Assembly: GCA_044892505.1 (NCBI GenBank)
Contig: CM097883.1
Span: 293,632,001-293,696,000, forward strand
Direction: 5' to 3'
Origin: Schmidtea nova
Lineage: Eukaryota
Length of the DNA stretch: 64,000 bases
This document shows, one piece after another, positions 36,498 to 55,400 of this stretch. Made by a program: the position numbers and the translations under genes. How positions within the stretch are numbered: position 1 is the stretch's first letter; the number at the start of each line of letters is the position of its first letter. The notes under the pieces were generated by a model. That model was not told the DNA's origin and searched no databases. It saw only the letters and a program-made list of their open reading frames with translations.

Positions 36498-36586
36498 AAC
36501 GATTTTAGGCGGGATTATCGGCCATCGCTTTGACTGAGGTTATCTCGAAATTTTCGGCAAAATTTGACTTACCTAAATGATAACAT

Positions 36587-37575
36587 TGTTGGGTTATTGG
36601 GTCGTTGGTGACTTTATGATTAACAAATTATTACCCTGACTCCAAAACGTGCTCTTTATTGACCCACAATAACAACTGACAACAGGAAATTTTATTGATT
36701 ATCACAAATAACTTCGATTTACAATGAACTGACCAAATTCAAACTACAGCTGATTATACAGTGCTTATTACGACACTATAGTGAAGAATAGCACTAGTGT
36801 ATAATCGATGTTCGAAATCACTCACTGCTGGGGAGTATAACAATTGGTAATTTGACTGGTTGTTTTCTTTATTTGACTTGGATTTACTCTCTGAATTTTA
36901 CTAGCTTTATTTTCTCAAACGCTTGAATAAGCTCCTGCTGCTTATCCCTTAGTTTCTGGTTTCAATTATTGGATTCTCCTTTTGACTCTTCTTTAACTTT
37001 CTCTGGACGTTTTTCTGCTTCCTTTTTAATGAATTTTACTAGCTTTATTTTCTCAAACGCTTTCTCTCAAATATTTTCTCTAACCACTTCTGTATACAAT
37101 GTTGTGTCTTTTTTCTGAGATGCTTCCTCCTTTTATACTTCTTCACTTTGTAGCACTTAAAATTATCAGCTGTTGTTACATTTTTCCAACATGATTTTCC
37201 ATTCATTTTCTCAGCAACGGAGTTATCTTTGACAGCTGTCAAGATAACCTCTGTTTTTCTCCTTTTTGCCGCTTCGGCTTGTTTGTTTTTGCCCACATTA
37301 TCTCTGACCGGTTGTCAAGATAAAATTCTTGTTGTTGTTTTTGTTTTTCCCAACTTTAGAATTTCTTCCTATTTGCACTAGTTAATTAGTGCTGACCTCT
37401 ATTTCGTTTTGCTTGTCTGATTTCTTTTCTTTTGTTTCCCCTTCTCATTTCTCATTCCTTTTTACTTCCGTTTTCTTTCCCAGGCTCCAATCAATCGTGT
37501 CATTCCCCATGACAATTTTCCCCCAAGTAATTTTGTTTATTTATTATATTATTTTGAATTTAGGTATCCTCAACA
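36587..37575 (-). repeat. 3' LTR (989 bp)
   Basis: TGTTGGG...CCTCAACA on +; identical by eye to 51971-52960 except for one C indel near 37285/52670. Confidence 0.98.
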
Positions 37576-37577
37576 TA

Positions 37578-37589
37578 TCTCCCCCCTTT
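37578..37589 (-). promoter_or_regulatory. Polypurine tract AAAGGGGGGAGA
   Basis: Purine run 2 nt upstream of the 3' LTR on the minus strand. Confidence 0.9.
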
Positions 37590-37866
37590 AAAAAAATTCG
37601 TCCTCGAATTAAAATCTTAAGTTATCTTTCGTACAATGCCCCCACTATTATTCTCCAATAAACGCTTCTCTATAATATTCTAATTTATTATTTTTACATA
37701 AATACTAGTTTACGATAATAGGGATAACAATTTTCATACTAACTGTAATAACAATAGCACTACCCATTTTAATAATGATAATTATCGTAGTGATAATAAA
37801 TATACTAATATTACAAATTTAAATTAATTCCTATAATTTTATCATCAGTATTGACAATAGTGATAA

Positions 37867-38295
37867 NNNNNNNNNNNNNNNNNNNNNNNNNNNNNNNNNN
37901 NNNNNNNNNNNNNNNNNNNNNNNNNNNNNNNNNNNNNNNNNNNNNNNNNNNNNNNNNNNNNNNNNNNNNNNNNNNNNNNNNNNNNNNNNNNNNNNNNNNN
38001 NNNNNNNNNNNNNNNNNNNNNNNNNNNNNNNNNNNNNNNNNNNNNNNNNNNNNNNNNNNNNNNNNNNNNNNNNNNNNNNNNNNNNNNNNNNNNNNNNNNN
38101 NNNNNNNNNNNNNNNNNNNNNNNNNNNNNNNNNNNNNNNNNNNNNNNNNNNNNNNNNNNNNNNNNNNNNNNNNNNNNNNNNNNNNNNNNNNNNNNNNNNN
38201 NNNNNNNNNNNNNNNNNNNNNNNNNNNNNNNNNNNNNNNNNNNNNNNNNNNNNNNNNNNNNNNNNNNNNNNNNNNNNNNNNNNNNNNNNNNNNNN
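37867..38295. other. Assembly gap (N run) inside the element's 3' non-coding region
   Basis: N characters flanked by (AAT)n-like low-complexity sequence. Confidence 1.
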
Positions 38296-38369
38296 ATAAT
38301 AATAATAATTTTATTAATTAATTTAGTTATCTTTATAATAAAAATTTTTTTTTTTTTTTTTTTAATTCA

Positions 38370-38580
38370 TTTTGCTATCTTGATGGCACTTATGTGCCTT
38401 CCATTTTTGTTTTTACTTCACCGCTATCCTGACTAGTTGTCAAGATAGCGGAATGTTTTTTTTTGTCCTTTCTGTGCCTGTGGCATTTATTGCCAAAAAA
38501 ATTGCCTCGCCGCTATCTGTCCAGATAGCAATTTAAAATTTGGTTTCGTTGGAATGTCGATTTTATAAAATCGACATTCC
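38370..38580. other. Cluster of five hairpins/palindromes, including a perfect 30-bp palindrome at 38551-38580
   Basis: ggcac-ttat-gtgcc; ccgctatcctgac-tagtt-gtcaagatagcgg; tggca-tttat-tgcca; gctatctg-tc-cagatagc; ggaatgtcgattttataaaatcgacattcc. Confidence 0.85.
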
Positions 38581-40275
38581 TTCGGATATTTCGTCATTAT
38601 TTTATGTTAAAAATAAATGTAAGTTTATTTATTATTTTTTTTTTATATGTATTAATAATAATAAAATAATAATGTTTTATCCGTTATAATAATGGCAATA
38701 TTTTCTTTTAAAAACTATAATTTATAATAATCCCTAACAACAATAACAATTTTAATGATAATTATAATGATGATAATAATAATAATTGAAATAATAATAA
38801 TAAAAATTAAGAAATTTGAATCTAAAATTGATGGTTTATCCGTAGTTATGAATGAAAATCTGAAAAAGCAGTACAAAGGTATGATACTATTAAACATTTC
38901 TAGAATTTGTCAGAACATCTATATAACAATGTTATCAATTTTGCAATTTTGAAGAATGGTTGATAAAATCGCCTTTGAATTCAGGCCGTATTATTTTTTT
39001 TTTGAGCATCCACAAAGTCAGGCGACGTTTTTGGTATCAAAATGTTAAGACATCTGTTCTTATTGAACTTGAACTTTCTATCACAATGTCAATTTTAATT
39101 GGTTTTACAATTTGGATTTTTACGAAAAGAATGGCCAACTCAATGATTGTTTTATATTATTTTGCTCCCACGCTTATACGTATGATTTTATTATTATTTT
39201 TTTTTTTTTAATTTAAATTCATCATCCTCACTACTGTCCACAATTGTAACAATATTAATACTAATGATAATAATAATACTATGATGATGATGATAATAAT
39301 AACAACATTAATAATAATAATAAAATAATAATATTCATAATAATAATAATAATAATAAATCGTAATATAATACTAATAATAATAACACTGATAATAATAA
39401 TGATGATATATAATATGATGGTGAAGATTTATTTTATTCTATTTTATTCTTTCAATTCTATCTTACTTCAATTCTATCCTGCTATTTCATTACCATTTAT
39501 TACCATTATTAATCCTATATTGACTCTGGTTTATAATTTTAAATTATTTCATTTTATTTAAACCTGCATTTGTTTATGATACTTTTTAAATATTTAATTT
39601 TTTTAATTTAATTTAATTTTTGTTTTATTTAATAGTTTTAATTATTTACTACTCTGATTTCATTATTTTGTATATATATATACATATATTTTACTTTATT
39701 ACACTTACCTACCTACCCTTATCATAGGTGTTATTAATTATTTTAAATTATCTCACCAGCTGGTTACGCCTGTGCTGCAGGCTGGTAGGGTAATTGGTTT
39801 TGAGAATCCAAATCCCGAAGTTCGAGATCTGCATTCTGAAAACCCTATAATTATTAAATTTTTTTATTTTTATTTTTATACATTTATTATATTAAATATA
39901 TATATTTTTATTTATACTTAAATACATATTTATATTACCTGAGTGACGTCCTATCGAACTTCTACTACAGGCGTATTAGTATCGTAATTTTTACTATACT
40001 CAATTATATATATTGTCATATATTTTATCATTACTATACAATTAATTAATTGATACTTCTAATTTTTTTTTTCACTGAAATTAATTTTACTCTAGGAACT
40101 ATGGGACTATCAATTTAATTTTTCGCAGAAATTAATATTTACTATTTTATTTTATTTTATTATTTTTTTTTGAATTTTTAATATTTAGATAATTTTGGGA
40201 TATTAATCATATTTTTTTTTTTTTTTTTTTTTTTTTGGGAAAATAAATAACAATAAGACTTTCTTTAATAAAATT

Positions 40276-41691
40276 CTATTTATCAATTACAATTTTGATA
40301 GTTTGGTTTCTTCCTCTATACGTGACGACAACCTTTGTTGCTTCCAATTCCTCACCATTGAACGTGATCATCTTATCGACCACTATTCCTTCTTTTGTTT
40401 GATTTCCTTTTTCAACACTATTTTGTTGCATCATTATTTTGTCCATTTCCACAATTGCATATTTAAATAAATCAAGTTTTTTCTCAACCATCATTTTCGC
40501 AGTTTTCTCACGAGCAATATGCATGTGTTCCACCATGTGAATGTCTTGTTCCATTTGCTGAACTTCTGCTTTCCTCTTCTCTTTTGGTTCCTCCATCTGC
40601 TCACTGGTTGTTGGAGCCTTTCTTTTCCTATACTCTTCTAACGAATATTTTCTTTTGCTGGTTGTTTCAGCACACTCTACATCATCCTGCCATTCATTTT
40701 CTATGGCCAAATAAATTCTTCTAATTGCATCAGTGTCTTCTAATGCCGTATGATTCCCTTTTTGCATTCTGATGCCACATATTTCTTCGGCTACTATTGA
40801 CAATTTATACCATTGCCCGTTCCTTGTGACTCTTCTTTTTGTCAATGCTCGAGCTGCCGCCAAATCGCGAATACCCCATAGATCCCTTGTCTGTACTCCA
40901 CTGTACAATAGTTCGCTTTGGAGATCATGTCCAACCAAGATTTTCCTTGCCGTTAATTGCTGAATTTTCCTCTGACTCTTGTATTGATCATCTTGATTTC
41001 TTGACATCTTCTCTGTGATGCCGTGAATTTGGGTAACGTAATTTTTTAGCTTTTCTCTGGGGGTTATTAATGAGTTATACAATATTCTTCCGTCATAGTT
41101 TATTAAACAAATAGACAGCGGAACCATCTTGTTTTGCTCACTTACGCCATATTCCGCGTCCATGAACATAATATTTTTTCTAATTTCTTCTTTTGTCATT
41201 TGTTTTCTCAAAAATGATTTTCGGTGCTTTAACATTTCTTCGGTTATCGGGAGTAACCTATTTTCTTCTTCATTGGTCATAATTTGTTCTAATGCCGGGA
41301 TTGTTGGAGCTGGTCCTCGGCATTCTAAAACAATGCAAGCCGTTCCATTGGCTGCTCGCATCTTCTTATGCCATATTTCTTTTGATATCTTCCATGATGA
41401 ATTAGTTTCCAATGTTTGTAGAACCGTTGCATCATTCTCTAAAATTTCTACTCTTCCTTTAAAAACATGAACCTCCCATGTCTCTTCGTTTCTTCTTATT
41501 AACACTTCTGAAAATTTCGTATTGGATTTCCATTCCAATTCCACCATACATATTCTCATTTCTTCATTCCCTAACCTTACCCAATTAGGAATTTTCAAAT
41601 TTTCTTCTATTACGATAACTTTGTCTGTATAGCTTCTTCTTTCTTGATAATATTTCCCGTATAATCTTGCTGGTTTGTTGATTTTTTCCAT
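40276..41691 (-). CDS. ORF2: 471-aa protein with a possible cupin-like N-terminus, a REX4/ISG20-like DEDDh 3'-5' exonuclease (aa ~174-333) and a charged C-terminus
   Basis: ExoI FMDAEYG (D178, E180), TQIHGIT, ILVGHDLQSE (E260 at the ExoII position), ExoIII HTALEDT (H314, D319). Motif order and spacing match REX4/ISG20. Confidence 0.85.
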   Translation of the reverse strand: MEKINKPARLYGKYYQERRSYTDKVIVIEENLKIPNWVRLGNEEMRICMVELEWKSNTKFSEVLIRRNEETWEVHVFKGRVEILENDATVLQTLETNSSWKISKEIWHKKMRAANGTACIVLECRGPAPTIPALEQIMTNEEENRLLPITEEMLKHRKSFLRKQMTKEEIRKNIMFMDAEYGVSEQNKMVPLSICLINYDGRILYNSLITPREKLKNYVTQIHGITEKMSRNQDDQYKSQRKIQQLTARKILVGHDLQSELLYSGVQTRDLWGIRDLAAARALTKRRVTRNGQWYKLSIVAEEICGIRMQKGNHTALEDTDAIRRIYLAIENEWQDDVECAETTSKRKYSLEEYRKRKAPTTSEQMEEPKEKRKAEVQQMEQDIHMVEHMHIAREKTAKMMVEKKLDLFKYAIVEMDKIMMQQNSVEKGNQTKEGIVVDKMITFNGEELEATKVVVTYRGRNQTIKIVIDK

Positions 41692-41971
41692 TCTTCCTTT
41701 AGATTTAATTTTGATCTTTTTTTTTTTTTTTTTTTTTTTCTTTAAAAATTTTCCAAGTCAAACTCTGAAAACAACCGCCATCTTTATATCCAAAAATTCT
41801 CTCCCCCTACAGTGTGATTATTCGACCAATCAAATTACATCAATACAATTTAAATTTTAACAACATATTTTACAACAAAAGATTATCAATTGACTATTAA
41901 AGAATCATTAACTAAAGAAATATAAGGGAAATAATACTGTATATTGTCATTACATGCAAAATAGTAGCTTA

Positions 41972-44900
41972 CTACACCCTTGATTCCAACCACATTGATA
42001 TCTGCGGCTTAGAATATTGAAAATCACAATTAGAATTGTTTCTTTTGTCAGTTCGTGAAATGAGGATAAAGCAAACGAGCAAGATCACTCTTTGTCTTGC
42101 CCTTATGATACATACAGAGAACATATCAACACAATTGTTAGTGAATGAATTTTCTTTATAGTTTAATGAAAAGTTTTCGATTTTTATACATGAAAGAGTT
42201 AATGGTAGAGTCAGATTGTGATCAAGGGTTTCTTTAGAGGGTTGATCGAGAACGAAATAAATCTGTCTGTCTTTAATGCAAATAGTTTGCCATCGGTCTG
42301 GATTGGTTTTCCCTTTGCAGTATTGGTTTGCTATAAGGAGTTTGCTTGTTTGTGATTCGGTTCCTGAGTTCTGAGTACTGACTCTCGCTCTGTTTCGGTG
42401 TTCTTTTCCCTCGACCTCAGCTTTATATGAAACGATTATTGTAGTATCACAATTTTCAATTTGAACTTGATTCGTTTTATTCCAGTATATCATCTCAATT
42501 TGAACATTTCTTTCAAACAATTGATTGTTTGTATAAATTCCTTTATTACGAAGTGGTTTTTTGTAATTGTTCATTGACAGATTAAGAGTGAGAACTACTT
42601 TCATTAAGTATACGTCTATTTTCTCTAAAGATGGTAATTTATTGACCGCATCTGGTATATCCATTTTTATTCCAACTGTGTTCGTTACCATATTTATTAA
42701 AACTGTCGTTATGAATAAAACTTTATTCATATAACTCAATGGAGTTGGATTTTTCTGGAACTTTTGCCGGATTTCTATTTCATCATTTGTTTTCTTTTGT
42801 TTATTTCGTAGCTGATGTTCCAGTTCAGGCACTTTCTTACATCTATTGGCATGAACTACAATTGTTTCTGCTTTTTTATTATTAATTGGTCGCAATTTTA
42901 GATTTGTTGCAGTCGCATCACAGACTGTATACGGACCTTTGAATGGTCTTTGTAATTTTGTTGAGAGTCCCTTTGTTGGCTCTGGCTTATTTAGATAAAC
43001 TAGGTCGCCAATTTTTATTCCGTGCTCATGCGCTTTTTTATCATAACTTTCTTTATATTGCTCCTGTCGATATTTTATTTTTAATCCGGCTTGAGTCCAA
43101 GCGGATTGTAAACGTTCTTGCAGAGCAACTTTATAATTTGGAATCTCTAAATATTGGGAAGTTGGTGATTGGAACTCTAAATCGATCGGCATATTATTTC
43201 GTCTTAGGTACATAAGATAAAAGGGCGTTTCTCCCGTACTCTCATTTACTGAATTTCGATAGGCATATAAGCATGGTCTAATGAACAGATCCCAGTCTTT
43301 TTGCTTTCGATTCACATAGGATGAGATCATATTAATTAATGTACCATTAAATCTTTCCACTAACCCATCTGTTTGTGGATGATATGGTGATGTGCTCAAT
43401 TTATATATACCAAATAATTCTGTAATAGATTTAAACAGATCACTCTGAAAGTTTGTCCCTTGATCTGTTAGCAATTTCTTTGGAACGCCATATCTAAATA
43501 TGATTTCTTCAACAAATATTTGTGCAACAGTTTCTGCCTTTTGGTTTGGCATAGCAAACGCTTCTGGCCATTTGGTTAAATAATCACAGAATACCAAAAT
43601 GTATTTATTTCCATTCGTTGTCTCGGGTAAAGGCCCGATAATATCCATTGCTGAAAATTCCATTGGCGCTGCTGGTATTGGCATTGGTTTTAGAGGAACC
43701 TTTATTTTCTTTCCAGTATTTCTTCGAGTCAGGCATATTTTGCAAGTGTTGCACCATTGCTTTACATCCTGTTCCATTGTATTCCAGAAATATTTTAGTT
43801 TTATTCGCGACAGCGTTTTTCTTGCTGACAAATGTCCTCCCAATGCCCCGTCATGGTACTGTAACAATAATGTATTTCGATGTATTATTGGAACTACTAT
43901 TAACAATTCATCATTTTTAATATATTTTAATATACCTCTGTGAATAACATATTTGTGTTTTTCCTCGATTAATTGTTTCAATTCTTTATCTTTTCTCATT
44001 ATTACTGTATGTTTTATTATTTGTTTCAGCTCCTCATCCATTTCTTGATCTCTCTGTAGCTCTGCCATATTATTTGCTGCTTTAACTACTGCAAATACAG
44101 TATCTCTTAAATTTATTTCTTCCTGGTTATTATTAATTTCCCCATTTGGAATTCTAGACAAGGTATCAGCATTAGCATTTGATTTTCCTGTTCGATATTT
44201 GATTTCAAAGTCATATTCTTGCAAGGCTAACGACCACCTAATTAATTTACTTGCTGCATCTCGATGCTTCATTAACCATTGTAATGGATTATGGTCTGTA
44301 TAGACAATGAATTTTCGGCCAACTAAGTACTGTCGAAATGTTGTTATGCCATATACTAGAGCAAGAGTTTCTTTTTCGATTGTTGAATAGTTTTTTTCAT
44401 GTGGTTTCAATGATCGACTAGCATATGCGATTACATGATCTTTTTCTCCTTCAACCTTTTGTCCTAATACCGCTCCCAACGCAAAACAGCTTGCGTCCGT
44501 CATTAACATAAATGTCTTTGTGAAATCAGGACCTCGTAATATTGGATTCATCATTAACTTTTGTTTGAGTATTTCGAAAACATCCTGCTGAGCTTTGCCC
44601 CACACGAATTTTGTGGTTTTCTTTAATAGCATCGTTAATGGTTGAGCAAAATGTGCAAAGTTTCTAATAAATTTTCTGTAATAGCTTGCTAACCCGAGAA
44701 ATTGTCTAATATCATCAACATTTTTTGGAGTTGGATAATCTTTAATTTTCTTAACATTTTCTGGATTTGGTTGTAGACCTTTTCGTGAAATGATATGTCC
44801 AATATACACCACCTCTGACTTTCCCCATTCACATTTTGATGGTTTGATTTTAAGATTTGCTTCTCTGAGCCGTTTAAATACTGTTTCCACATCTCTCATG

Positions 44901-47900
44901 TGCTCTTCGAAATTACCTGAGAAGATTATAATATCATCAATATATACCAAGGCGTGTGGAATATCTCGCAGCACAAAATTCATTCCTCTTTGAAATGTCG
45001 CTGGTGCACCTGTTAAACCAAATGGTAAAACATTAAATTCATACAAACCTTTTCCATCTGAAAACGCTGTTTTCCCTTTATCTGTCTCTTTAACTTTGAA
45101 TTGATTGTAGCCTTTGTTTAAATCAATAACAGTAAAATATTGAGCTTCTCCCATTTTGTCAAACATTTCCTGAGGAACCGGAATGGGATACGTATCCTTT
45201 CTTGTCACTTGATTCAGTTTTCGATAGTCAATACAAAATCTCAGTTCACCGTCTTTCTTTTTGACTACAACAATAGAGGAAGAAAATGGTGAAAAACTGT
45301 CTCTAATAATATGGAATTCTTTCATAGCCTTTATTTGTCTATCGCTTTCGTCTTGATGCGCATACGGAATTCTGTATGGTCGTAATTTAATTGGAGTTTC
45401 ATCAATTAATGGAATTTCATGTTCAATTATATGAGTTACTCCCAAATCATACTCATGTTTCGCAAAAATATCTTGATATTTTCTCAACAATTTTGTAAAT
45501 GTTTGTGTTTGCTCTTGCGTCAACTCTGCACTGTCAACTTGGGGTTCTTTGTATATTTTAATATTTTTTGGTAATCTTTTATTATTGATTTTTAGGATTT
45601 TTGTTAGCTTTCCTAATTTCGTTTTTGGTTTAAATGACACTTCTTTGTCGCTATTGTTAGTGATGCGAACAGGAATTAATTGATCTTGAACTTTCACTAC
45701 TTCGTCGCATATTGGAGTATCATATTTGGCAATTAAATTCTCACTTGGTTGAAATATAAATTCATCGTCTGGAACTCCCATTGTATTCACATAACAAATA
45801 ACTTCACTCTGAGGTGGTACTCTTAACGTTTGATTTAGAAACACATCTCCCGTTTCATGAATAACTTTTCCTGTTTTTCCTACAATTAGATTTCCGGTTT
45901 TCAAATCAAGAGAGACTCCTTCCAATTGCTCCAACACATCCATCCCTACCAAACACATTACTGGGCTATCTTTCATTATTAGCGCATTATGAACAATTTC
46001 TTTATTTCCAATATTGAATTTTACTCTGATCTGTCCAATGATATTTAATTTGTTTTTCGTCATTGATCGTACAACTTCTTCTGTGCTTTTCATTCGTGCT
46101 CTTTCCCCTGAATTTAATAATTTATCTGATAATATTGTATTGCTTGAGCCTGAATCTATTAATGCTTCGACTCTATGTTTATTCACTTGTATCCATATTC
46201 TTGGCTGTCTTCCTTTATTTCCAATTGTCATTAATGCATAATTTCCTGGTAATCCCAGCATGTTTCTCCTTTCAATTTCCGCACTAGTTGGTGCGATTTG
46301 CTCATTTGTCAATTCAATGTTTTCAACTGGTCTCATTTCTTTTAACTTCTCTACTGGATATATTGGTGCTGTTGGTAGAAAAGTTTTTGGAATGCATAAT
46401 CGACTGAATGTGTCTGTTTCACTTGTTTGTGGTACCGATTGTAATAAATTCAAAGATTTAGATTTTTCTCGTATATCATTAATTTTAATTTTACTGTTTT
46501 TATAATAATATATTGGAGGTACTTTTACTTTACCCCCATTCCCACTCTCGCTGTCCGAACTCGAATCAATGTCTCTTCCGTCATTATTTAGTCGTGACTT
46601 GACTTTCCCCATCTCTTTATATTGATGCTTTGTAATTACAAATCTTGCCAGACATGGAATACATCCGATAATCAGTTTCCAGGACCATCCCGAAATAACA
46701 TATAGCTGATGAGTAGTTAGTATTTGAGATATTATCACTTTAATCACCACGAACATAACATAAATTCCAATTAATCCTGCACATGCTTGTCCCAAAAACA
46801 TGAATTTCCCCCATATCTTTTTCATCGTATTGTACGTTGCTTTCTTATAATGATCTGGTGTTAGTAAATAATCATAATTTACTTTGCCTTCACCACTTGG
46901 TAATATAGTATCAATCATTTCAGTAATGACTCGTTCTTTCTTTGATGGAAATAGTAGATTTCTTCGGGCTTCTTCAACATCTTCTTGAGAATACAACTCA
47001 GTTTGTGCTAATTTGTCCAATGATGTAAAATTTATTAAATATTCAAGTTTTGTTAATTCTAATTTTTCTGGATTTCTTACTCCTTTATGATCTGGTAATG
47101 ATATCCACGAATCTGATGTTAGTCGATATAATGGTGCGAGCAATCGGTTACATTTTAAAAGTTTAGGTTTCGCGTCTTCTTCCAACAATATTCGAGTTAT
47201 TGGCTCCATGAATCTCAATTTACCATTAACACTTACTGGCAATTCATTGGTACATTGCTCGTACTTTATAATTTGCACGGGAATCTCGTTGCATTTATAG
47301 CTATACAATGCTTCTCCAAATACTCTTGCAAACACACCGTTTTCTGATATTAACATAGGTGCTACCAAGTTTGGATTTGTGACTGCCATCGCCATTCTGT
47401 TCCGTAGTATTTCTTTATTCAACTTACAGTCGTTTAATATCATTTCTCTGTAAATATTTTCCATAATACTTTGACTGTAGTGGAACAAATAGTCTATTTT
47501 GTTATTAAAATAATTTGTCAATTTGATATCCGTACTATGTATTTGGACTTGAGCTTCCTCGACTCTTTTCTTGGATACATAAATTCCTTTATAATTGGTC
47601 TCATACACCGTTTGACCACATTTATTTACCACATTTTTTCGAATAAATCTCATACCGTCATCTAATAAAGTTGACATCAAAACAACTGGAGTTTTTCTGG
47701 TTCTCAATGGGGTAATTCTGATTGTCATGTCCGGTTTTGCCTCCACATTCAAATTTTCCGGTCTTTCTCTCAACTGTTCTCCACTCATTTCATTAAAACT
47801 CATTGTTTTCAAATGTATTAAATTACATAGATTTGTCTTAACTTCGTACACCAAAATTGATTCTCCTGTTTGACAGCTAGCCTGCTTCATATTGCAGAAT

Positions 47901-50900
47901 GGATGCGTTTGTAACTTGCCTGTGTCGTCATCAAAAGCTCCTTGGAATTCTCTCAATTCCGTCAAATACTCTTCCATCACAACAATTTGATCAATAACTT
48001 CTCCATTCATTTTGTACGGTTCTCCTTTACAATCCCCATTAGCCTTTATTGTTCCTTTTTCGATAATTGTTTCTCGTATAGCATGATTTAATTTAGCTTT
48101 CAATTTAACCTCGGGGCTAATTTTCACTTCCCCTGTTTGAAACGCAGCCATGCAATTTTCTGGGTTTACATCAACTGGCCTTGGGATTGAATACATTTTA
48201 ATTAGTGATGTGTGACTCCATTTGCCACAATAAAACACAAAGCTCGTTCTCTTTACAATGCACTCTCTTACTACCGCATGTCTAAAGCCTGATTCTTGGT
48301 ATACATGATACTTTACATCATTTTCAACTGTTAAACTCATTGGGTGTGCATCAGAACATTCTGTCATGTCCACCATGGAATAAATCTTTCCCATTTTGGT
48401 TTGAGAACAATCGTACGCAATTAAAGATGTTGTTTGCGTCGTAATCGCACATAATATTATGATCATAAACATTATAAATGGAAGTTTCATAGGTTTACCT
48501 CTCGGTATTCCTTCGTAACTTTCTCTCTTTTCGACTGATGATTCTGTTTTTTGTTTAACTAATTTCTCCCAGCCTCCAATTTCCTTTATCCATTTGCCCA
48601 CATGCTTATACAATACTTTGCTCGCCTTTTTGATTACTTCATCTCGTTTTTCCATATTTAAATAATCGTGTGTCCCGATTTCTAACAAAATATAACTCGT
48701 AATTGTCAATACTAAATCTCTATCCATTTCTCCTGTCATCATATTGGTTATCACTCCATCATCACAGAATTCCTTGTTGTCTTTTACATATCTCAAGACC
48801 ACATAAAGTCTCTTTTTCAACTTTTTTGCAATTTTTCTCACATATAATTCTACTTGTGTTTTCTCTGCTGCTTCGCCATATAATTCATTTGCCAGCGCAC
48901 GTACAACCTTTTCAGTCTCTTTTAATTCCTTCTGACCTCTCTCACCTTGGAGTCTCTGTATTATTTCACATCTCACCTCGTATAAATCCTTGCGTTGTCT
49001 TTCCTCCGTAATATTATCAATCTCCATTTCTGTCATATACGCTTCATTTTTAACTTCCGTTTTTATTATACTTCCATCAATTCTCTGCTCAGTTTCCTGT
49101 TCCTCTCCATGTTCTGTCATTTCTTGTTCCTCTGATATTTCATCCTCATTATCCATTGTTTCACTGCCGAACTCTGGTAATTCAATTTTATAACCTTTTT
49201 CTACTTCATCTGTATCCACTTGTTTCACTGCAATTATATCATTAATAAAATTTTGATCCGTAAGAAATCTATCTTCGTTACGCTTTCGTGGCATACATCC
49301 ACAATCAAATAAATATTCATCATCGTCTAGCTCAAAACCTTTATACGTTAGCACAATTATTCCATCATTGCCCATGATTTCTGCTGTTCTTCGACGAATT
49401 TTATTCACTTTCGTATACCAATGTTCATCCGTATATTCTACTCCTTGACCATTTATTTTTAACAGTACTACGAATGGCTCATTATAAATCCCTTCTTCCC
49501 TGAATTCTTGACCAAATTTTTGAATAAGAGTTTTTATTGTTTTACCATATTCGTTTTCCGCATTCATATAGGGTCTAACACAGTCTAGAATTTTTAACTT
49601 GTCTTCTACTTTGAGTTCTAAATTCAAAATATTGTTTAATTTATCAATAATGTCACCTGTGTTTCCTTTAAGCAATGCTTCCATTAGTTCAAATCTGATT
49701 TCGTCAGAGTCATTTGTTACTGTTTTTTCCTTGGCGATCATATTCGTCATTTGCATTTCATTTTCACCGCCAGGAATTAATCCATAATCTACCAAGAATT
49801 CGCCATCCTCTAATACTTGATCCATAAATTTAAGTTCCACCGCCCAACTTTCACACTTGTGCATTACTTCTCTTTTTAGCTCGCGTACTTTCTCGTATGC
49901 ATCGATTTTATAGTTGGATTTTGTACCATCTGGAGCATTCATTTGGATAAATATAGGATCTAACCATTTATTTTTCCGTAGATATTGCCCAAATATTCTC
50001 ATAAAATCTTTGAATACATCTCGTTTTTCCACACTTGCTGCATAACATTCTGCACAAAGTTTAATAACAGTTTTAATTTTTGTCAGACTTAAAGGTATTT
50101 TAGTTAGCCTCGTAAATAATTCTGTTATTTTCTGGGAATTTACGTCTGGTTCCGCAACTAATTTTCTGATTTTGGCAATAAATACAGTACTCCTTTCACT
50201 TTGTATGTCGGCTTTAGCTTTATTGATTTGTACTTTATCTGATTCTGACTCGCTTTCGCTCAACTCTTTCCTCGTCATCATGTGGGTATCTGTTTCTTCA
50301 TCCGATTCAAATTTGGCTATCAATTTATTCAGTTTTTGGTTCAATTGTTTAACATCGCTTTCGATCTTTTCTCTAAAACCATCTTGCTGAACATAGGCTA
50401 TATTATCATTCGATGGATTTTCATCTTGAAATCTTATTGTTCGCTTTAATATTGGCCTTTGAAATTTATTCGTATTTCTTGGACAGGATCTTGCAATATG
50501 TCCATAATTTCTACACAAATGGCATTGAATTTGTCCGTTCAAATTTACATTGTCTCTCTGTGGTGAAGGTGAAGTTGAGGGTGATCTTGATCTTGAAAAA
50601 CAATTTCTGGAAACATGTCCTTTTCTACCGCAGCGATAACATTGCACTTCATTAACATTGGATTTTATATCAGGAACTGTTCTCCGAAAATTGGTTCCCC
50701 TATCGTTGGTACGATAATCTTGGGTTATTCTTCTGGGTGTACTATCGGAATTATTTTTGAACCAACACTGGTTTGCATAATGGCCAATCTTCTTGCAATT
50801 TTCACACTGGATCACTCTGGATCTCTCAGCGCCTTGGAAATTACGGCTTGGTCTATTTATATTTAACTCGGTTCTCCATTTGGGTGATGGACTTTTTGAT

Positions 50901-51574
50901 CGCTGGAATCTATTTTCTGGCTCCCAATTGTTTTGGGTTGGTGTAATTGATCTTTCCCTTTGAGCTGGAATAATCGCGAACACATCAGATTTGTTTTTGG
51001 TGCTCTTCAAATTCAATTCGATTTTCATTGCCTTTTTTACTAGTTCATCAAAATTATCATAATCTACACAGCATAATGCGGTTTTTATTTCTTTGTTTAT
51101 TCCTGACAAAAATTGGTCTTGGATTAATTCTTGCATTTGTTGGGCTAGGCCTGGTTGTTTTGAGTCTTCTTCAAATGATTTACTTGCGAGGGTTGACAAA
51201 TGATACGCAAATTCGCTCACTGTTTCATTTGGATTTTGAACTCTACTATAAAACTTTTGACGCATTAATCTTTTGATATCTCCTCCGATAAGTTTTGCAG
51301 CTAACGCATCTTTCAACTTTGCCCAATCATTACCAATTAATTTTTTATCAATCTGTTGCCAAACCTCTCTAGCTGCTCCTTTAAGATATAAAGGTAATCT
51401 CTGAATCATAATCGCTTGAGACCATCCGTACGCCGTTGCATACATGTAGTAATCACTCATAAAATCTACAAAAATAACCGGATCTCCTCCATATTGTTCC
51501 ACAGGTAATCTTTGACAACTTGCAAAATCATTATTTTCTTTAATAACTGATACTGGCAAATCTTCACTACTCAT
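41972..51574 (-). CDS. ~3200-aa Gag-Ubl-Ubl-Bcl2-Env-PR-RT-RH-IN polyprotein (first ATG at 51574; the ORF track starts at GTG 51619)
   Basis: Three CX2CX4HX4C knuckles; ALIDSG protease (46148-56); YIDD RT (44933-44); TDAS...EKETLA...TDH RNase H; HHCC and D,D,E integrase; GPY motif. No stops or frameshifts. Confidence 0.97.
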   Translation of the reverse strand: MSSEDLPVSVIKENNDFASCQRLPVEQYGGDPVIFVDFMSDYYMYATAYGWSQAIMIQRLPLYLKGAAREVWQQIDKKLIGNDWAKLKDALAAKLIGGDIKRLMRQKFYSRVQNPNETVSEFAYHLSTLASKSFEEDSKQPGLAQQMQELIQDQFLSGINKEIKTALCCVDYDNFDELVKKAMKIELNLKSTKNKSDVFAIIPAQRERSITPTQNNWEPENRFQRSKSPSPKWRTELNINRPSRNFQGAERSRVIQCENCKKIGHYANQCWFKNNSDSTPRRITQDYRTNDRGTNFRRTVPDIKSNVNEVQCYRCGRKGHVSRNCFSRSRSPSTSPSPQRDNVNLNGQIQCHLCRNYGHIARSCPRNTNKFQRPILKRTIRFQDENPSNDNIAYVQQDGFREKIESDVKQLNQKLNKLIAKFESDEETDTHMMTRKELSESESESDKVQINKAKADIQSERSTVFIAKIRKLVAEPDVNSQKITELFTRLTKIPLSLTKIKTVIKLCAECYAASVEKRDVFKDFMRIFGQYLRKNKWLDPIFIQMNAPDGTKSNYKIDAYEKVRELKREVMHKCESWAVELKFMDQVLEDGEFLVDYGLIPGGENEMQMTNMIAKEKTVTNDSDEIRFELMEALLKGNTGDIIDKLNNILNLELKVEDKLKILDCVRPYMNAENEYGKTIKTLIQKFGQEFREEGIYNEPFVVLLKINGQGVEYTDEHWYTKVNKIRRRTAEIMGNDGIIVLTYKGFELDDDEYLFDCGCMPRKRNEDRFLTDQNFINDIIAVKQVDTDEVEKGYKIELPEFGSETMDNEDEISEEQEMTEHGEEQETEQRIDGSIIKTEVKNEAYMTEMEIDNITEERQRKDLYEVRCEIIQRLQGERGQKELKETEKVVRALANELYGEAAEKTQVELYVRKIAKKLKKRLYVVLRYVKDNKEFCDDGVITNMMTGEMDRDLVLTITSYILLEIGTHDYLNMEKRDEVIKKASKVLYKHVGKWIKEIGGWEKLVKQKTESSVEKRESYEGIPRGKPMKLPFIMFMIIILCAITTQTTSLIAYDCSQTKMGKIYSMVDMTECSDAHPMSLTVENDVKYHVYQESGFRHAVVRECIVKRTSFVFYCGKWSHTSLIKMYSIPRPVDVNPENCMAAFQTGEVKISPEVKLKAKLNHAIRETIIEKGTIKANGDCKGEPYKMNGEVIDQIVVMEEYLTELREFQGAFDDDTGKLQTHPFCNMKQASCQTGESILVYEVKTNLCNLIHLKTMSFNEMSGEQLRERPENLNVEAKPDMTIRITPLRTRKTPVVLMSTLLDDGMRFIRKNVVNKCGQTVYETNYKGIYVSKKRVEEAQVQIHSTDIKLTNYFNNKIDYLFHYSQSIMENIYREMILNDCKLNKEILRNRMAMAVTNPNLVAPMLISENGVFARVFGEALYSYKCNEIPVQIIKYEQCTNELPVSVNGKLRFMEPITRILLEEDAKPKLLKCNRLLAPLYRLTSDSWISLPDHKGVRNPEKLELTKLEYLINFTSLDKLAQTELYSQEDVEEARRNLLFPSKKERVITEMIDTILPSGEGKVNYDYLLTPDHYKKATYNTMKKIWGKFMFLGQACAGLIGIYVMFVVIKVIISQILTTHQLYVISGWSWKLIIGCIPCLARFVITKHQYKEMGKVKSRLNNDGRDIDSSSDSESGNGGKVKVPPIYYYKNSKIKINDIREKSKSLNLLQSVPQTSETDTFSRLCIPKTFLPTAPIYPVEKLKEMRPVENIELTNEQIAPTSAEIERRNMLGLPGNYALMTIGNKGRQPRIWIQVNKHRVEALIDSGSSNTILSDKLLNSGERARMKSTEEVVRSMTKNKLNIIGQIRVKFNIGNKEIVHNALIMKDSPVMCLVGMDVLEQLEGVSLDLKTGNLIVGKTGKVIHETGDVFLNQTLRVPPQSEVICYVNTMGVPDDEFIFQPSENLIAKYDTPICDEVVKVQDQLIPVRITNNSDKEVSFKPKTKLGKLTKILKINNKRLPKNIKIYKEPQVDSAELTQEQTQTFTKLLRKYQDIFAKHEYDLGVTHIIEHEIPLIDETPIKLRPYRIPYAHQDESDRQIKAMKEFHIIRDSFSPFSSSIVVVKKKDGELRFCIDYRKLNQVTRKDTYPIPVPQEMFDKMGEAQYFTVIDLNKGYNQFKVKETDKGKTAFSDGKGLYEFNVLPFGLTGAPATFQRGMNFVLRDIPHALVYIDDIIIFSGNFEEHMRDVETVFKRLREANLKIKPSKCEWGKSEVVYIGHIISRKGLQPNPENVKKIKDYPTPKNVDDIRQFLGLASYYRKFIRNFAHFAQPLTMLLKKTTKFVWGKAQQDVFEILKQKLMMNPILRGPDFTKTFMLMTDASCFALGAVLGQKVEGEKDHVIAYASRSLKPHEKNYSTIEKETLALVYGITTFRQYLVGRKFIVYTDHNPLQWLMKHRDAASKLIRWSLALQEYDFEIKYRTGKSNANADTLSRIPNGEINNNQEEINLRDTVFAVVKAANNMAELQRDQEMDEELKQIIKHTVIMRKDKELKQLIEEKHKYVIHRGILKYIKNDELLIVVPIIHRNTLLLQYHDGALGGHLSARKTLSRIKLKYFWNTMEQDVKQWCNTCKICLTRRNTGKKIKVPLKPMPIPAAPMEFSAMDIIGPLPETTNGNKYILVFCDYLTKWPEAFAMPNQKAETVAQIFVEEIIFRYGVPKKLLTDQGTNFQSDLFKSITELFGIYKLSTSPYHPQTDGLVERFNGTLINMISSYVNRKQKDWDLFIRPCLYAYRNSVNESTGETPFYLMYLRRNNMPIDLEFQSPTSQYLEIPNYKVALQERLQSAWTQAGLKIKYRQEQYKESYDKKAHEHGIKIGDLVYLNKPEPTKGLSTKLQRPFKGPYTVCDATATNLKLRPINNKKAETIVVHANRCKKVPELEHQLRNKQKKTNDEIEIRQKFQKNPTPLSYMNKVLFITTVLINMVTNTVGIKMDIPDAVNKLPSLEKIDVYLMKVVLTLNLSMNNYKKPLRNKGIYTNNQLFERNVQIEMIYWNKTNQVQIENCDTTIIVSYKAEVEGKEHRNRARVSTQNSGTESQTSKLLIANQYCKGKTNPDRWQTICIKDRQIYFVLDQPSKETLDHNLTLPLTLSCIKIENFSLNYKENSFTNNCVDMFSVCIIRARQRVILLVCFILISRTDKRNNSNCDFQYSKPQISMWLESRV
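46620..48424 (-). other. In-frame glycoprotein domain, chuvirus-like / herpes gB-like class III fusogen
   Basis: Begins LIAYDC after a hydrophobic signal-like segment; EC..KRT...FYCGKWSH matches the chuviral C..R.IYYCGMHSH pattern; C-terminal WGKFMFLG..AGLIGIY...GWSW membrane region. Confidence 0.8.
48551..48997 (-). other. In-frame Bcl-2-like domain
   Basis: BH2-like WIKEIGGWEKLV (compare Bcl-xL WIQENGGWDTFV), BH3-like VVRALANEL, BH1-to-BH2 spacing preserved but NWGR absent. Confidence 0.7.
49280..49957 (-). other. Two in-frame ubiquitin-like domains (aa ~555-625 and ~715-780)
   Basis: ELKFMDQVLEDGEFLVDYGL and VLTYKGFELDDDEYLFDCGC compared with ubiquitin [20 protein letters not shown]. Confidence 0.75.
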
Positions 51575-51947
51575 TATGGGTTCCTTTTTACTTTTGCTTC
51601 GTAAATTATATCGACTCACTTTAATAAATTATTTTCTCAAATTTCGCAAAATCTAAATTCAAATTTATTACCACAATTAATAATTTACCTTTTCACAATT
51701 TCGTTAAATAATCTCTCTTTATCACAATTATTTTCACTCTCTTTTCAATAAATTTTATTTCAATAATTCTTCACCACTTTATTTCGCCGGATATATCCCA
51801 ATTACTTTTTCAATCGCTCCTCACCAACGTTTGATCACGTCGGATTATGGTACAACTGTTTTATTCAATACTATTTTCACCAACCTCTGATCACGTCGTA
51901 TATATATAACAATTACTTTTCTTCAATAATCTTTTCACCAACGTCAG

Positions 51948-51965
51948 ATCACGTCGGGCTCACCA
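51948..51965 (-). promoter_or_regulatory. Primer binding site, tRNA-Trp (TGGTGAGCCCGACGTGAT)
   Basis: 17/18 match to the tRNA-Trp PBS TGGTGACCCCGACGTGAT, 5 nt from the 5' LTR. Confidence 0.92.
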
Positions 51966-51970
51966 AATAA

Positions 51971-52960
51971 TGTTGGGTTATTGGGTCGTTGGTGACTTTA
52001 TGATTAACAAATTATTACCCTGACTCCAAAACGTGCTCTTTATTGACCCACAATAACAACTGACAACAGGAAATTTTATTGATTATCACAAATAACTTCG
52101 ATTTACAATGAACTGACCAAATTCAAACTACAGCTGATTATACAGTGCTTATTACGACACTATAGTGAAGAATAGCACTAGTGTATAATCGATGTTCGAA
52201 ATCACTCACTGCTGGGGAGTATAACAATTGGTAATTTGACTGGTTGTTTTCTTTATTTGACTTGGATTTACTCTCTGAATTTTACTAGCTTTATTTTCTC
52301 AAACGCTTGAATAAGCTCCTGCTGCTTATCCCTTAGTTTCTGGTTTCAATTATTGGATTCTCCTTTTGACTCTTCTTTAACTTTCTCTGGACGTTTTTCT
52401 GCTTCCTTTTTAATGAATTTTACTAGCTTTATTTTCTCAAACGCTTTCTCTCAAATATTTTCTCTAACCACTTCTGTATACAATGTTGTGTCTTTTTTCT
52501 GAGATGCTTCCTCCTTTTATACTTCTTCACTTTGTAGCACTTAAAATTATCAGCTGTTGTTACATTTTTCCAACATGATTTTCCATTCATTTTCTCAGCA
52601 ACGGAGTTATCTTTGACAGCTGTCAAGATAACCTCTGTTTTTCTCCTTTTTGCCGCTTCGGCTTGTTTGCTTTTTGCCCACATTATCTCTGACCGGTTGT
52701 CAAGATAAAATTCTTGTTGTTGTTTTTGTTTTTCCCAACTTTAGAATTTCTTCCTATTTGCACTAGTTAATTAGTGCTGACCTCTATTTCGTTTTGCTTG
52801 TCTGATTTCTTTTCTTTTGTTTCCCCTTCTCATTTCTCATTCCTTTTTACTTCCGTTTTCTTTCCCAGGCTCCAATCAATCGTGTCATTCCCCATGACAA
52901 TTTTCCCCCAAGTAATTTTGTTTATTTATTATATTATTTTGAATTTAGGTATCCTCAACA
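51971..52960 (-). repeat. 5' LTR (990 bp)
   Basis: Near-identical partner of 36587-37575; adjacent to the PBS. Confidence 0.98.
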
Positions 52961-54704
52961 ACATTAAACTTTATTAGGTCTTTCATACGCTCTGACCATC
53001 ATACTGCCGCGTTTATTTGGACAGTCCTTTTGACTCAAACTTCTTATTTCACCATCAATCGCATTCATTACCAGTTCATCATTCATAGATTTTATTAATG
53101 AGTGGATTTATCATCAACCTACTGTCCAATCATTGTTACGGCTTTTGTTGTTGAGCTACGAATTTGTAGTCACTCATCGCTACACATATCGAACGTGGTG
53201 GTTATATCATCGATCAAACTCATTTAATTGTAGCTGCGGGTATGATCATTTACTTATTATCAATCGCCATTCACTACTTATGAAATCAGTCACTCACTCT
53301 CTAAACACATTCATTCGGCAGCACATTAAACAAGCTTCTACATCATCCGACCTCAGAAAATTCTCTGATTGAATCCTCGTCATGGTTATTTGTCAATTTG
53401 ATGCACTGAAACATTCCAATTCATGACGTTCGACTCTCGCCAGCCTCATTTCATAACGACTTTACATTTTCGGGGTGAAATCATGCTATTAAGGCCCTTG
53501 CAGGGTTATGTTGTCCTCTCATCCTTGGTATGGATATATCCCTTCCCGTTCCATTAGCGCTGTAACGCCGCATCAGCCATCACCGCCAGGTGATGCGCTG
53601 AGAGGCCCAGTTTTCGCCCTTCAAATCCTACGACCTCCGGGTTGCGACCTTATAGATTTTAAACATGAGTAATACATGAGGGTTTAACACTGACATGATA
53701 TCAAAAACAAATCACCAACGTACTTTTTATTTCGTTTGATTCTACAGATTTACTTGATACAACACAAGACTTCACTGATAAAAATGACATCACATTCTGA
53801 ATTTGATCACTACTTATGTATTGTTTTGGCCTCGCCTTCTGAACAATCAGAATTCAGTACGGTTGCCTATTTGTCAGTCATTTATTTTTTATTGTTTGTT
53901 TTTCTTTCATTAAACCGGTGAGTTTTGGTGGTTACTCATTTGCTTATGACTTTATGACTTTTTTATTTTAGTTCTCTACATACTATCCGAGCGGTCCACC
54001 CCGGCATTTGCTGCGTTCAGCAATTTCATTTTACTCTGGTAATTCTATTGGCAGATTTTATTATTCATCGCTTTTCTGTTTCAGGCATCAGTGGTTTTCA
54101 ATTACTCAATGGTAATTTATTATATATTGTGCTTTCTTTAGTGCTGACATTTTGACAGCTCTTGTTCTCGCCTGATTGGTTTTGCTCGATCATCACGCGG
54201 CTATCTCATCTCGGTCTAGTGGTAAGTTCTGTATTGTTATTACTGTTTTAGTATTATGTTATTACTTTCAGGTTTCGCCGTGCTTCGATGATTATCTGTC
54301 TATCGCTGATGGTTTGCAATTTATTTTATTTAATTTTATTACTATTTTCCTATTTAATTTGTACTTTCTTTTAGATTATTTACGATTCGCTGGGCCCAAC
54401 AAGTATAACAAACGTACTCACCCATGACGATCCAACTAGGGAATTGATTATCCAAATTGGTGGTGATCAACAATGGCATTTTATTGATTTTCTTTTCTTT
54501 TATATACTCTTACTAGCGGGATTCTCTCAAATTTTCTTTTTAGTTACAGCTTTAGCGAATCTTGGAAAATTCTGAGATTCTCACTATTCTTCACCATAAT
54601 TTTCACTTCATTAGATGCGTAAAATATCATATTCTCGTGCAATATTAATTATATATCTAAATAATAAAATTATTATTTTTTTAAATATAATCTTTAGTTT
54701 TTCA

Positions 54705-55400
54705 AGTAGACTCGACAATGTAATCGTTTGATGTTAGCGAAAGATCTAATAATGGTTAAATTAAACTGTGAATGAAAGGAACCGAACATCGAAATCGAGC
54801 ATGAATATTCTCTTGATAGCTCGTAAACCAAGAGAAAGTACTCGATCAATTATAGTTCTGGTAGCAGCGCTCACTTTTTGCGAGTATTTCTGACCATTAC
54901 TTACAGAACTAACTTTAGTTGCAATTGCTAACTATTGGTTAAAATCAACAATTATTTGGTTACCACAAACTAACATCCTACTATGGTACCAACAATAATA
55001 TAATGCAAAATGCACACATAATATTAACATTACAACACAGGCACAAGTATATCATCACACTATACTGCAAAATATACACAAAGAGTATCAAAAATATATA
55101 AAAATTAGTCATACACATGAGAGGCCATCGCGTTATATTAGGTCAAATGCATGAAAAATCATCATACTATAATGCAATTACATGTAATTACACACAAAAT
55201 AAAGACATATATCACACACAAAACAATAATCATTAAGAGAAATATCTACATACTATAGTGCAATTGCATAAAAAATATACATATACAAAATACAAACAAA
55301 ATGTTAGAAATTCATTATACACACAAAGAATATAATAACATACATAGAAAATCATCACACACAAAATAGCATAATAATAATGACAATAATGATGACGATG
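54705..55400. repeat. Unclassified dispersed repeat, copy B right part (includes the empty site of the small Gypsy)
   Basis: 54720-54990 aligns with 11700-11932 + 15133-15190 and has a single GTTAA at ~54948-52; followed by an ACAT-rich array like 32480-33240. Confidence 0.7.

What the first reader, a model, noticed from the sequence alone, without database searches (positions are those of the whole stretch)
48551..48997. Bcl-2-like domain inside a retrotransposon polyprotein
Seen: WIKEIGGWEKLV (aa 1010-1021, nt 48557-48592) matches the BH2 signature W(I/L)xxxGGW. A BH3-like VVRALANEL lies upstream, and a helix at BH1 spacing (52 vs 53 residues to the BH2 Trp in Bcl-xL) has DRDL in place of NWGR. 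A hydrophobic segment follows ~25 aa later, like a Bcl-2 tail anchor. Known: many large DNA viruses carry divergent Bcl-2 homologues, and some have lost BH1 and act on immune signalling instead. Inference: the element may block apoptosis or innate signalling in the cells where it replicates.
Basis: partly seen in the sequence, partly recalled or inferred. Interest (0 to 1): 0.9.

Follow-up and report, generated by a model that had tools for sequence, protein, structure and literature searches.

The report
Possible Bcl-2-like domain in retroelement
A young, complete virus-like retrotransposon carries, just before its envelope protein, a helical domain with weak but repeated sequence likeness to the Bcl-2 family of cell-death regulators; if real, it would be the first such gene seen in a retroelement.

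Summary
Domain order: Gag, two ubiquitin-like repeats, the domain in question (X, aa 866-1043), signal peptide, class III envelope glycoprotein (PF24664), protease, RT, RNase H, integrase. This Gag-Env-Pol layout is already published.

Is X Bcl-2-like? The evidence always points the same way and is always weak.
- Pfam Bcl-2 scores E 0.078 in the window and E 0.0015 in relative P0004. Both are below Pfam's cut-off.
- A profile containing P0004 finds Bcl-xL in the PDB at E 0.015.
- GGW is invariant in all three relatives that have X. Relatives without X give no Bcl-2 hit.
- AlphaFold models are poor (pLDDT 47-52), so the fold test is inconclusive, although Bcl-2-family chains dominate the non-significant Foldseek hits.
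- BH1 is degenerate and the "BH3" is not conserved.
- The "tail anchor" is the envelope's signal peptide, present in 11 of 11 relatives. After signal-peptidase cleavage it would nonetheless leave X tail-anchored on the cytosolic face.

Verdict: partly supported. I put Bcl-2 ancestry at about 0.6; an anti-death function is inferred only. No report of Bcl-2 in an LTR retroelement was found.

The parts
36587..52960 (-). Whole LTR retroelement (Ty3/gypsy-type, Gag-Env-Pol order). It contains an assembly gap at 37867-38295, left as it is.
   Evidence: Two 990-bp direct repeats, 99.9% identical, with TG..CA ends, flanked by ACAT on both sides.
51971..52960 (-). 5' LTR
   Evidence: blastn self-comparison of the window; termini read.
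36587..37575 (-). 3' LTR
52961..52964 (.). Target-site duplication ACAT; the other copy is at 36583-36586.
51947..51965 (-). Primer-binding-site-like stretch starting TGG, five bases after the 5' LTR.
   Evidence: Read from the sequence. The tRNA was not identified.
37576..37589 (-). Polypurine-tract-like run abutting the 3' LTR.
41972..51619 (-). Single uninterrupted 3215-codon polyprotein ORF (first ATG at 51574).
50420..51574 (-). Gag: capsid-like region and three CCHC zinc knuckles (aa 16-400).
   Evidence: Pfam Retrotrans_gag 8e-8 and zf-CCHC 6e-12.
49220..50212 (-). Two copies of a helical plus ubiquitin-like module (aa 470-800).
   Evidence: Internal repeat, blastp E 3.7e-5. Weak Pfam ubiquitin hit, E 0.0025. 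Shared with relatives, E 1e-6 to 1e-14.
48491..49024 (-). Domain X, the candidate Bcl-2-like domain (aa 866-1043). The core conserved with P0004 is aa 943-1024 (nt 48548-48793).
   Evidence: Pfam PF00452 E 0.078. blastp against the P0004 domain E 3e-7. All-helical AlphaFold models.
48557..48592 (-). BH2-like motif WIKEIGGWEKLV.
   Evidence: I146, G150, G151 and W152 of the piece are invariant in 3 of 3 sequences.
48425..48490 (-). Internal signal peptide of Env (aa 1044-1065). Inferred to remain as the membrane anchor of X after signal-peptidase cleavage.
   Evidence: Kyte-Doolittle peak. The same layout, hydrophobic run then small residues then x-x-AYDC, is seen in 11 of 11 relatives.
46598..48424 (-). 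Class III envelope glycoprotein with a transmembrane segment at about aa 1606-1634.
   Evidence: Pfam PF24664 Monjiviricetes_fusion 9.6e-89; hydropathy.
45917..46210 (-). Aspartic protease
   Evidence: Pfam RVP and gag-asp_proteas.
44789..45265 (-). Reverse transcriptase
   Evidence: Pfam RVT_1 2e-32.
44213..44602 (-). RNase H
   Evidence: Pfam RT_RNaseH 2e-38.
43334..43891 (-). Integrase (zinc-binding domain and catalytic core).
   Evidence: Pfam Integrase_H2C2 1.7e-17 and rve 9e-10.
41975..43333 (-). C-terminal tail of unknown nature (aa 2763-3215). The last 266 aa have no match in the relatives.
40276..41691 (-). Separate 471-codon ORF inside the LTR pair: an ISG20-like DEDDh 3'-5' exonuclease.
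   Evidence: Pfam RNase_T 4.3e-6. PDB ISG20 6.4e-7 and ISG20L2 1.5e-6.

Best explanation
Domain X (aa 866-1043) is a strongly diverged Bcl-2-family domain captured by one lineage of envelope-carrying Ty3/gypsy elements and kept as an accessory module of the polyprotein. Shown: its place, directly upstream of the Env signal peptide; its presence in three distant relatives with GGW invariant; and its weak but specific profile likeness to the BH1-to-BH2 half of Bcl-2 and Bcl-xL. Inferred: the polyprotein is made in the cytosol as far as X. The internal signal peptide then threads Env into the ER, and signal peptidase cuts before the conserved AYDC start of Env. X is left on the cytosolic face, held by the signal peptide as a C-terminal anchor, which is the topology of a tail-anchored Bcl-2 protein. 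From there it would bind host death regulators and delay the death of cells stressed by expression of the element. More weakly inferred: it is pro-survival rather than pore-forming. BH1 is degenerate, so ligand binding may differ from the canonical groove.
For: Pfam PF00452 is the top hit of the cut-out window domain (E 0.078, profile 75-100). In P0004 it matches the homologous domain (E 0.0015, 19.4 bits, profile 36-100). The two domains are homologous (blastp E 3e-7). The profile of window + P0004 + P0010 hits Bcl-xL chains at E 0.015-0.019 over about 87 residues, the only non-ankyrin hits in the top 60. A profile without P0004 still has Bcl-xL/Bcl-2 chains as most of its 62 PDB hits, at the BH2 site, E 0.37-3. 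GGW and the Ile before it are invariant in 3 of 3. Controls: no PF00452 hit at E<=10 in four relatives without X, and none at E<=0.01 in five more. Foldseek on both models: 46 and about 41 of the top 50 PDB hits are Bcl-2-family chains. X diverges no faster than Gag or protease (24% against 28% and 21% identity to P0004). A signal peptide follows in 11 of 11 relatives. Precedent: integrating adintoviruses carry Bcl2 and IAP homologues (PMC8502044).
Against: No hit reaches Pfam's gathering score (31.4 bits). The whole-ORF scan at E<=1 did not list Bcl-2. phmmer of the window domain finds nothing in the PDB at E<=10 or in 1.84 billion proteins at E<=0.001. AlphaFold models have pLDDT 47.5 and 52, with long N-terminal helices unlike Bcl-2. 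Foldseek E-values are 0.2-1.6 and TM-scores at most 0.42, and Mcl-1 and Bcl-xL are heavily over-represented in the PDB. In the viral library only 3 of 50 top hits are Bcl-2 homologues. Only the C-terminal ~85 residues show any likeness. BH1 is DRDL here and TFAK in P0004, and the BH3-like stretch is not conserved. The strongest numbers all depend on one sequence, P0004. Most relatives lack X, so it is dispensable. No functional data exist.
Confidence: 0.5

Rival explanations
1. X is a lineage-specific helical spacer or matrix-like domain with no Bcl-2 ancestry. It sits next to the membrane, held by the Env signal peptide, and couples Gag to the cytosolic side of Env during assembly. The BH2-like motif is a convergent or chance membrane-proximal helix-turn motif.
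For: All Bcl-2 matches are below threshold. No confident fold was obtained. By eye, some relatives without X keep one short helix before the signal peptide that recalls the motif (for example IVQEAGEWVEVI in P0005). This hints that the motif may serve the signal peptide or Env context rather than a Bcl-2 fold. The N-terminal half of X is highly charged and predicted as very long helices.
Against: In P0004 the match extends over 65 profile positions, BH1 to BH2, not just the motif. Three different search methods all return the same family. Relatives without X never hit it. The X HMM does not detect the short helix in those relatives.
Confidence: 0.3
2. X is Bcl-2-derived but does not protect the cell. 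It could act like Bax/Bak or a viroporin on membranes, or it could act on other pathways at the ER (autophagy, calcium, innate signalling), as BH-poor poxvirus Bcl-2-like proteins do.
For: BH1 is degenerate (no NWGR). The inferred anchor is at the ER, not the mitochondrion. Foldseek lists include BAX, BAK and BOK as well as pro-survival members.
Against: Nothing discriminates between these roles. A retained BH2 is typical of groove-forming family members (established knowledge, not tested here). Most known virus-borne homologues are pro-survival (for example PMC2572728, PMC9609553).
Confidence: 0.12
3. X is a passenger: a captured host fragment or linker with no present function, intact only because the insertion is very young.
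For: The LTRs are 99.9% identical, so the open frame says little about selection. X is absent from most relatives.
Against: X is retained in three lineages whose Env proteins are only about 38-40% identical. Its most conserved residues form one motif, and its divergence equals that of Gag and protease.
Confidence: 0.08

Closest known systems
Cellular Bcl-2 family (Pfam PF00452; Bcl-xL as the solved-structure hit)
   Same: A W-I-x3-G-G-W motif (BH2-like) at the C-terminal end of a helical domain. A hydrophobic helix at BH1 spacing. A hydrophobic membrane segment 27-60 residues downstream. Profile matches run over BH1 to BH2.
   Different: Scores are below the family threshold. There is no NWGR and no conserved BH3. 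The N-terminal half is unrecognisable. The domain is embedded in a polyprotein, and the anchor is a neighbouring protein's signal peptide.
Virus-encoded Bcl-2 homologues of large DNA viruses and adintoviruses (BHRF1, HHV-8 ORF16, ASFV A179L, iridovirus and adintovirus Bcl2)
   Same: A host death-regulator fold carried by a mobile or viral genome, often with BH motifs much eroded. A few of them appear among the weak Foldseek hits. Adintoviruses are also integrating elements (PMC8502044).
   Different: Those are separate genes of DNA viruses. This one would be a domain of a reverse-transcribing element's polyprotein. I found no such case in the literature.
Gag-Env-Pol 'errantiviruses' with herpes-gB / chuvirus-like class III Env (Nematoda, Bryozoa, Platyhelminthes; PMC13524379)
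   Same: Ty3/gypsy Pol, class III Env placed between Gag and Pol, LTRs over 99% identical, multiple near-intact relatives.
   Different: That paper does not mention Bcl-2, ubiquitin or an exonuclease (0 occurrences). Here everything from Gag to integrase is one ORF, with extra modules.
Internal signal sequences of flavivirus and pestivirus polyproteins (established knowledge, not tested here)
   Same: An internal signal peptide that, after signal-peptidase cleavage, stays as the C-terminal membrane anchor of the upstream cytosolic protein.
   Different: Analogy of mechanism only. Cleavage here is inferred from the conserved small-residue pattern and the AYDC start of Env.

Membership tests
Bcl-2 family (PF00452) | Profile match at or above Pfam's gathering score (31.4 bits) | tested here: not met
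   Window domain 14.0 bits, E 0.078. P0004 19.4 bits, E 0.0015. Not listed for the whole ORF at E<=1.
Bcl-2 family (PF00452) | BH2 motif (W-x4-G-G-W) at the end of the domain | tested here: met
   WIKEIGGW at aa 1010-1017. GGW is invariant in window, P0004 and P0010. Both Pfam alignments end on it, at profile position 100.
Bcl-2 family (PF00452) | BH1 motif (NWGR) at the start of the central helix | tested here: not met
   At the equivalent spacing the window has DRDL and P0004 has TFAK. Only the hydrophobic helix that follows is kept.
Bcl-2 family (PF00452) | BH3 helix (hydrophobic-x3-L-x2-hydrophobic-[GA]-D) | tested here: not met
   VVRALANEL fits loosely. The aligned P0004 stretch does not fit, and no profile match covers it.
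Bcl-2 family (PF00452) | Globular bundle of about 8 helices around a buried hairpin | tested here: inconclusive
   AlphaFold pLDDT 47.5 (single sequence) and 52.0 (3 sequences), all-helical with 6 helices. Foldseek top hits are mostly Bcl-2 family, but E is 0.2-1.6 and TM at most 0.42.
Bcl-2 family (PF00452) | C-terminal tail anchor | tested here: inconclusive
   A hydrophobic segment follows at aa 1044-1065, but it is the Env signal peptide, present in 11 of 11 relatives with or without X. A tail-anchor topology after cleavage is inferred.
Bcl-2 family (PF00452) | Binding of BH3 ligands / control of cell death | not testable with these tools
   No functional data.
Ty3/gypsy LTR retroelement with envelope (errantivirus-like, Gag-Env-Pol) | LTR pair with TG..CA ends, target-site duplication, PBS and PPT | tested here: met
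Ty3/gypsy LTR retroelement with envelope (errantivirus-like, Gag-Env-Pol) | Gag with CCHC knuckles; PR-RT-RH-IN in gypsy order | tested here: met
   Pfam hits.
Ty3/gypsy LTR retroelement with envelope (errantivirus-like, Gag-Env-Pol) | Class III fusion glycoprotein with signal peptide and TM, between Gag and Pol | tested here: met
   PF24664 9.6e-89. Signal peptide and TM. Arrangement as described in PMC13524379.

The most novel reading that the evidence does not exclude
A lineage of enveloped LTR retroelements behaves like a small 'large virus'. It has picked up several host-interaction modules: a functional Bcl-2 homologue presented as a tail-anchored protein by borrowing the Env signal peptide, an ISG20-like exonuclease, ubiquitin-like modules, and ankyrin repeats in relatives. 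That would make this the first reverse-transcribing element known to carry its own cell-death regulator.
Probability: 0.3. Interest if true: 0.8.

Novelty: new variant of a known kind. Interest (0 to 1): 0.6.

Why it matters
Bcl-2 homologues are a hallmark of large DNA viruses and, more recently, of adintoviruses. None is known from retroviruses or LTR retroelements, which are thought to have too little coding room for host-control genes. A retroelement that carries one, together with an interferon-type exonuclease and ubiquitin-like modules, would show that invertebrate endogenous retrovirus-like elements fight host cell death and innate defence with captured host genes. It would also give a natural example of a signal peptide serving two neighbouring proteins. 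If the likeness is only convergent, the finding reduces to an unusual accessory linker in an already described kind of element.

Tried and rejected
- phmmer of X against the PDB found nothing at E<=10.
- HMMER of X against 1.84 billion representatives found nothing at E<=0.001.
- A word-indexed search of aa 460-1045 among long proteins found nothing.
- The first LTR search (seed 12, 38300-55400) missed the LTRs because the 3' one lies beyond the gap. blastn found them.
- AlphaFold as a single sequence and with a 3-row alignment both gave low confidence.
- phmmer of whole P0004 against the PDB: ankyrin hits fill the 60 rows shown, so Bcl-xL could not be seen.
- An HMM of X found no hidden copy in the other relatives or elsewhere in the ORF.
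- An Env neighbour-joining tree does not group the three X-bearing elements together, so one gain versus several losses cannot be told apart.
- Troyka elements were considered and rejected: they have no Env and different termini.

Full report
1. What is there

The finding lies on the minus strand in one uninterrupted ORF of 3215 codons, 41972..51619.

Pfam gives the layout along the ORF:
- Gag with three CCHC knuckles.
- A region with a weak ubiquitin hit (E 0.0025).
- The region in question, here called X (aa 866-1043).
- A hydrophobic segment (aa 1044-1065).
- A viral class III fusion glycoprotein (PF24664, E 9.6e-89) with a transmembrane segment.
- Protease, reverse transcriptase, RNase H and integrase.
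- An unassigned tail of about 450 residues.

blastn of the window against itself finds two 990-bp direct repeats, 99.9% identical, at 36587-37575 and 51971-52960. They have TG..CA ends, a 4-bp ACAT duplication on both flanks, a TGG-initiated primer-binding-like site and a polypurine run. The thing is therefore a complete and very young LTR element of 16.4 kb. An assembly gap (37867-38295) lies inside it and was left alone.

Between pol and the 3' LTR there is a second ORF (40276..41691). It resembles ISG20-type DEDDh exonucleases (Pfam RNase_T 4.3e-6; PDB ISG20 6.4e-7).

2. Relatives

Searching with the Env part returned 14 proteins. Eleven of them, P0001-P0011, 575 to 4029 residues long, were compared in detail, plus one longer cluster member, P0032.

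They share the order Gag, ubiquitin-like repeats, linker, signal peptide, Env, protease (often several copies), RT, RH, IN. Some carry ankyrin repeats or C2H2 fingers.

This Gag-Env-Pol order with a gB/chuvirus-like Env has been described for Nematoda, Bryozoa and Platyhelminthes (PMC13524379). The element as such is therefore a known kind. That paper does not mention Bcl-2, ubiquitin or an exonuclease.

In all 11 relatives the hydrophobic segment is followed by small residues and a conserved x-x-AYDC start of Env. It is a signal peptide, not a feature of X.

3. Domain X in the family

X is present only in the window, in P0004 and in P0010. P0010 is cut at its N end and keeps only the last 24 residues of X. 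The other relatives have low-complexity linkers instead.

The window and P0004 domains align over 82 residues at 24% identity (blastp E 3e-7). That is about as diverged as their Gag (28%) and protease (21%).

In the three-way alignment the invariant positions of X include the Ile and the G-G-W of the motif.

By chance the motif is expected 8.6e-5 times per ORF, and GGW occurs once in all six frames of the window.

4. Is it Bcl-2-like?

Sequence evidence:
- Cut out on its own, the window domain has PF00452 as its best Pfam hit, but at E 0.078 and 14 bits, and over the last 26 profile positions only. The whole ORF did not list it at E<=1.
- In P0004 the homologous domain hits PF00452 at E 0.0015 and 19.4 bits, over profile positions 36-100. 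By my own knowledge of the family, that span runs from BH1 to BH2.
- A profile of window + P0004 + P0010 finds Bcl-xL chains in the PDB at E 0.015-0.019 over about 87 residues. These are the only non-ankyrin hits in the top 60.
- A profile without P0004 still returns Bcl-xL/Bcl-2 chains as most of its 62 PDB hits, at the BH2 site, but at E 0.37-3.
- Relatives without X never hit PF00452: none at E<=10 in four of them and none at E<=0.01 in five more.
- Against this, no score reaches Pfam's cut-off of 31.4 bits. X alone finds nothing in the PDB or in 1.84 billion proteins.

Motifs:
- BH1 is not kept. The window has DRDL and P0004 has TFAK where NWGR would lie. Only the hydrophobic helix that follows is shared.
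- The BH3-like stretch is not conserved in P0004.
- Only the C-terminal half of X shows any likeness to Bcl-2.

Structure evidence:
- Both AlphaFold jobs gave all-helical but unreliable models (pLDDT 47.5 and 52.0).
- Foldseek against the PDB put Bcl-2-family chains (Mcl-1, A1, Bcl-xL, BAX, BAK, BOK, BHRF1) in 46 and about 41 of the top 50 places. E-values were 0.2-1.6 and TM-scores at most 0.42, and the family is heavily over-represented in the PDB.
- In the viral library only three of the top 50 were named Bcl-2 homologues: an adintovirus, an iridovirus and HHV-8 ORF16.
- The fold test is therefore inconclusive, neither passed nor failed.

5. Most likely mechanism

- Shown: X sits directly before an internal signal peptide.
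- Inferred from how internal signal sequences work in other polyproteins: the ribosome makes Gag, the ubiquitin-like modules and X in the cytosol. The signal peptide then inserts Env into the ER, and signal peptidase cuts before AYDC. X is left on the cytosolic face, held by the signal peptide as a C-terminal anchor. This is the topology of tail-anchored Bcl-2 proteins, obtained by a different route.
- Inferred from known viral homologues: it delays the death of cells that express the element.
- Unknown: how X is separated from the upstream modules.

I put Bcl-2 ancestry at about 0.6 and this whole account at about 0.5. The rivals are a lineage-specific membrane-proximal assembly domain (0.3), a Bcl-2-derived domain with another role (0.12), and a functionless passenger (0.08).

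6. Novelty

Full-text searches found no report of a Bcl-2 homologue in an LTR retroelement or retrovirus. The nearest precedents are the large DNA viruses and the integrating adintoviruses (PMC8502044). I therefore rate it a new variant of a known kind, conditional on the homology being confirmed.
Noticed in passing
window 40276-41691 (-): A 471-codon ORF inside the LTR pair, downstream of pol, resembles interferon-stimulated exonuclease ISG20 and ISG20L2 (PDB E 6.4e-7 and 1.5e-6; Pfam RNase_T 4.3e-6). It has no counterpart in the relatives' polyproteins. It may be a second captured host gene.
   Followed up: partly
window 49220-50212 (-), aa 470-800: Two copies of a helical plus ubiquitin-like module (internal repeat E 3.7e-5; Pfam ubiquitin E 0.0025), shared with most relatives. 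The first copy ends in ...LIPGG, which recalls a ubiquitin C-terminus and might be a host-protease cleavage site. This is speculative.
   Followed up: partly
relatives P0001-P0009, P0032: Relatives carry up to four protease-like domains, some of them after the integrase. Some also have ankyrin repeats (P0004, P0032) or C2H2 zinc fingers (P0003, P0009, P0032) inside the polyprotein.
   Followed up: partly
relatives P0003, P0005, P0006, P0009, just before the signal peptide: By eye, one short helix before the signal peptide recalls the BH2-like motif (for example IVQEAGEWVEVI in P0005), although the rest of X is missing. It could be a remnant of X or a motif tied to the signal peptide. The X HMM does not detect it.
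   Followed up: partly
window about 46700-47060 (-), aa ~1519-1635 (Env stem): The window + P0010 profile hits centrin-2 chains (E 0.0025-0.06) over the membrane-proximal part of Env, around an EF-hand-like loop. The usual calcium-binding residues do not seem to be kept, so this is probably spurious.
   Followed up: no
window 41975-43333 (-), aa 2763-3215: A long tail after the integrase has no family match. Its last 266 residues have no match in the relatives, and it has a hydrophobic segment near the end.
   Followed up: partly
window 38300-40200: A very AT-rich stretch (GC about 0.19) of degenerate TAA/TGA-type repeats lies inside the element, between the exonuclease ORF and the gap. This is unusual content for an LTR element.
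   Followed up: no
window 12769-14706 (+) and 23085-23309 (-): Degraded fragments of other gypsy-type pol genes (21-28% identical to this element's Pol). The first has an interrupted reading frame. Other old repeats are shared between 3970-4629 and 58165-58813.
   Followed up: no
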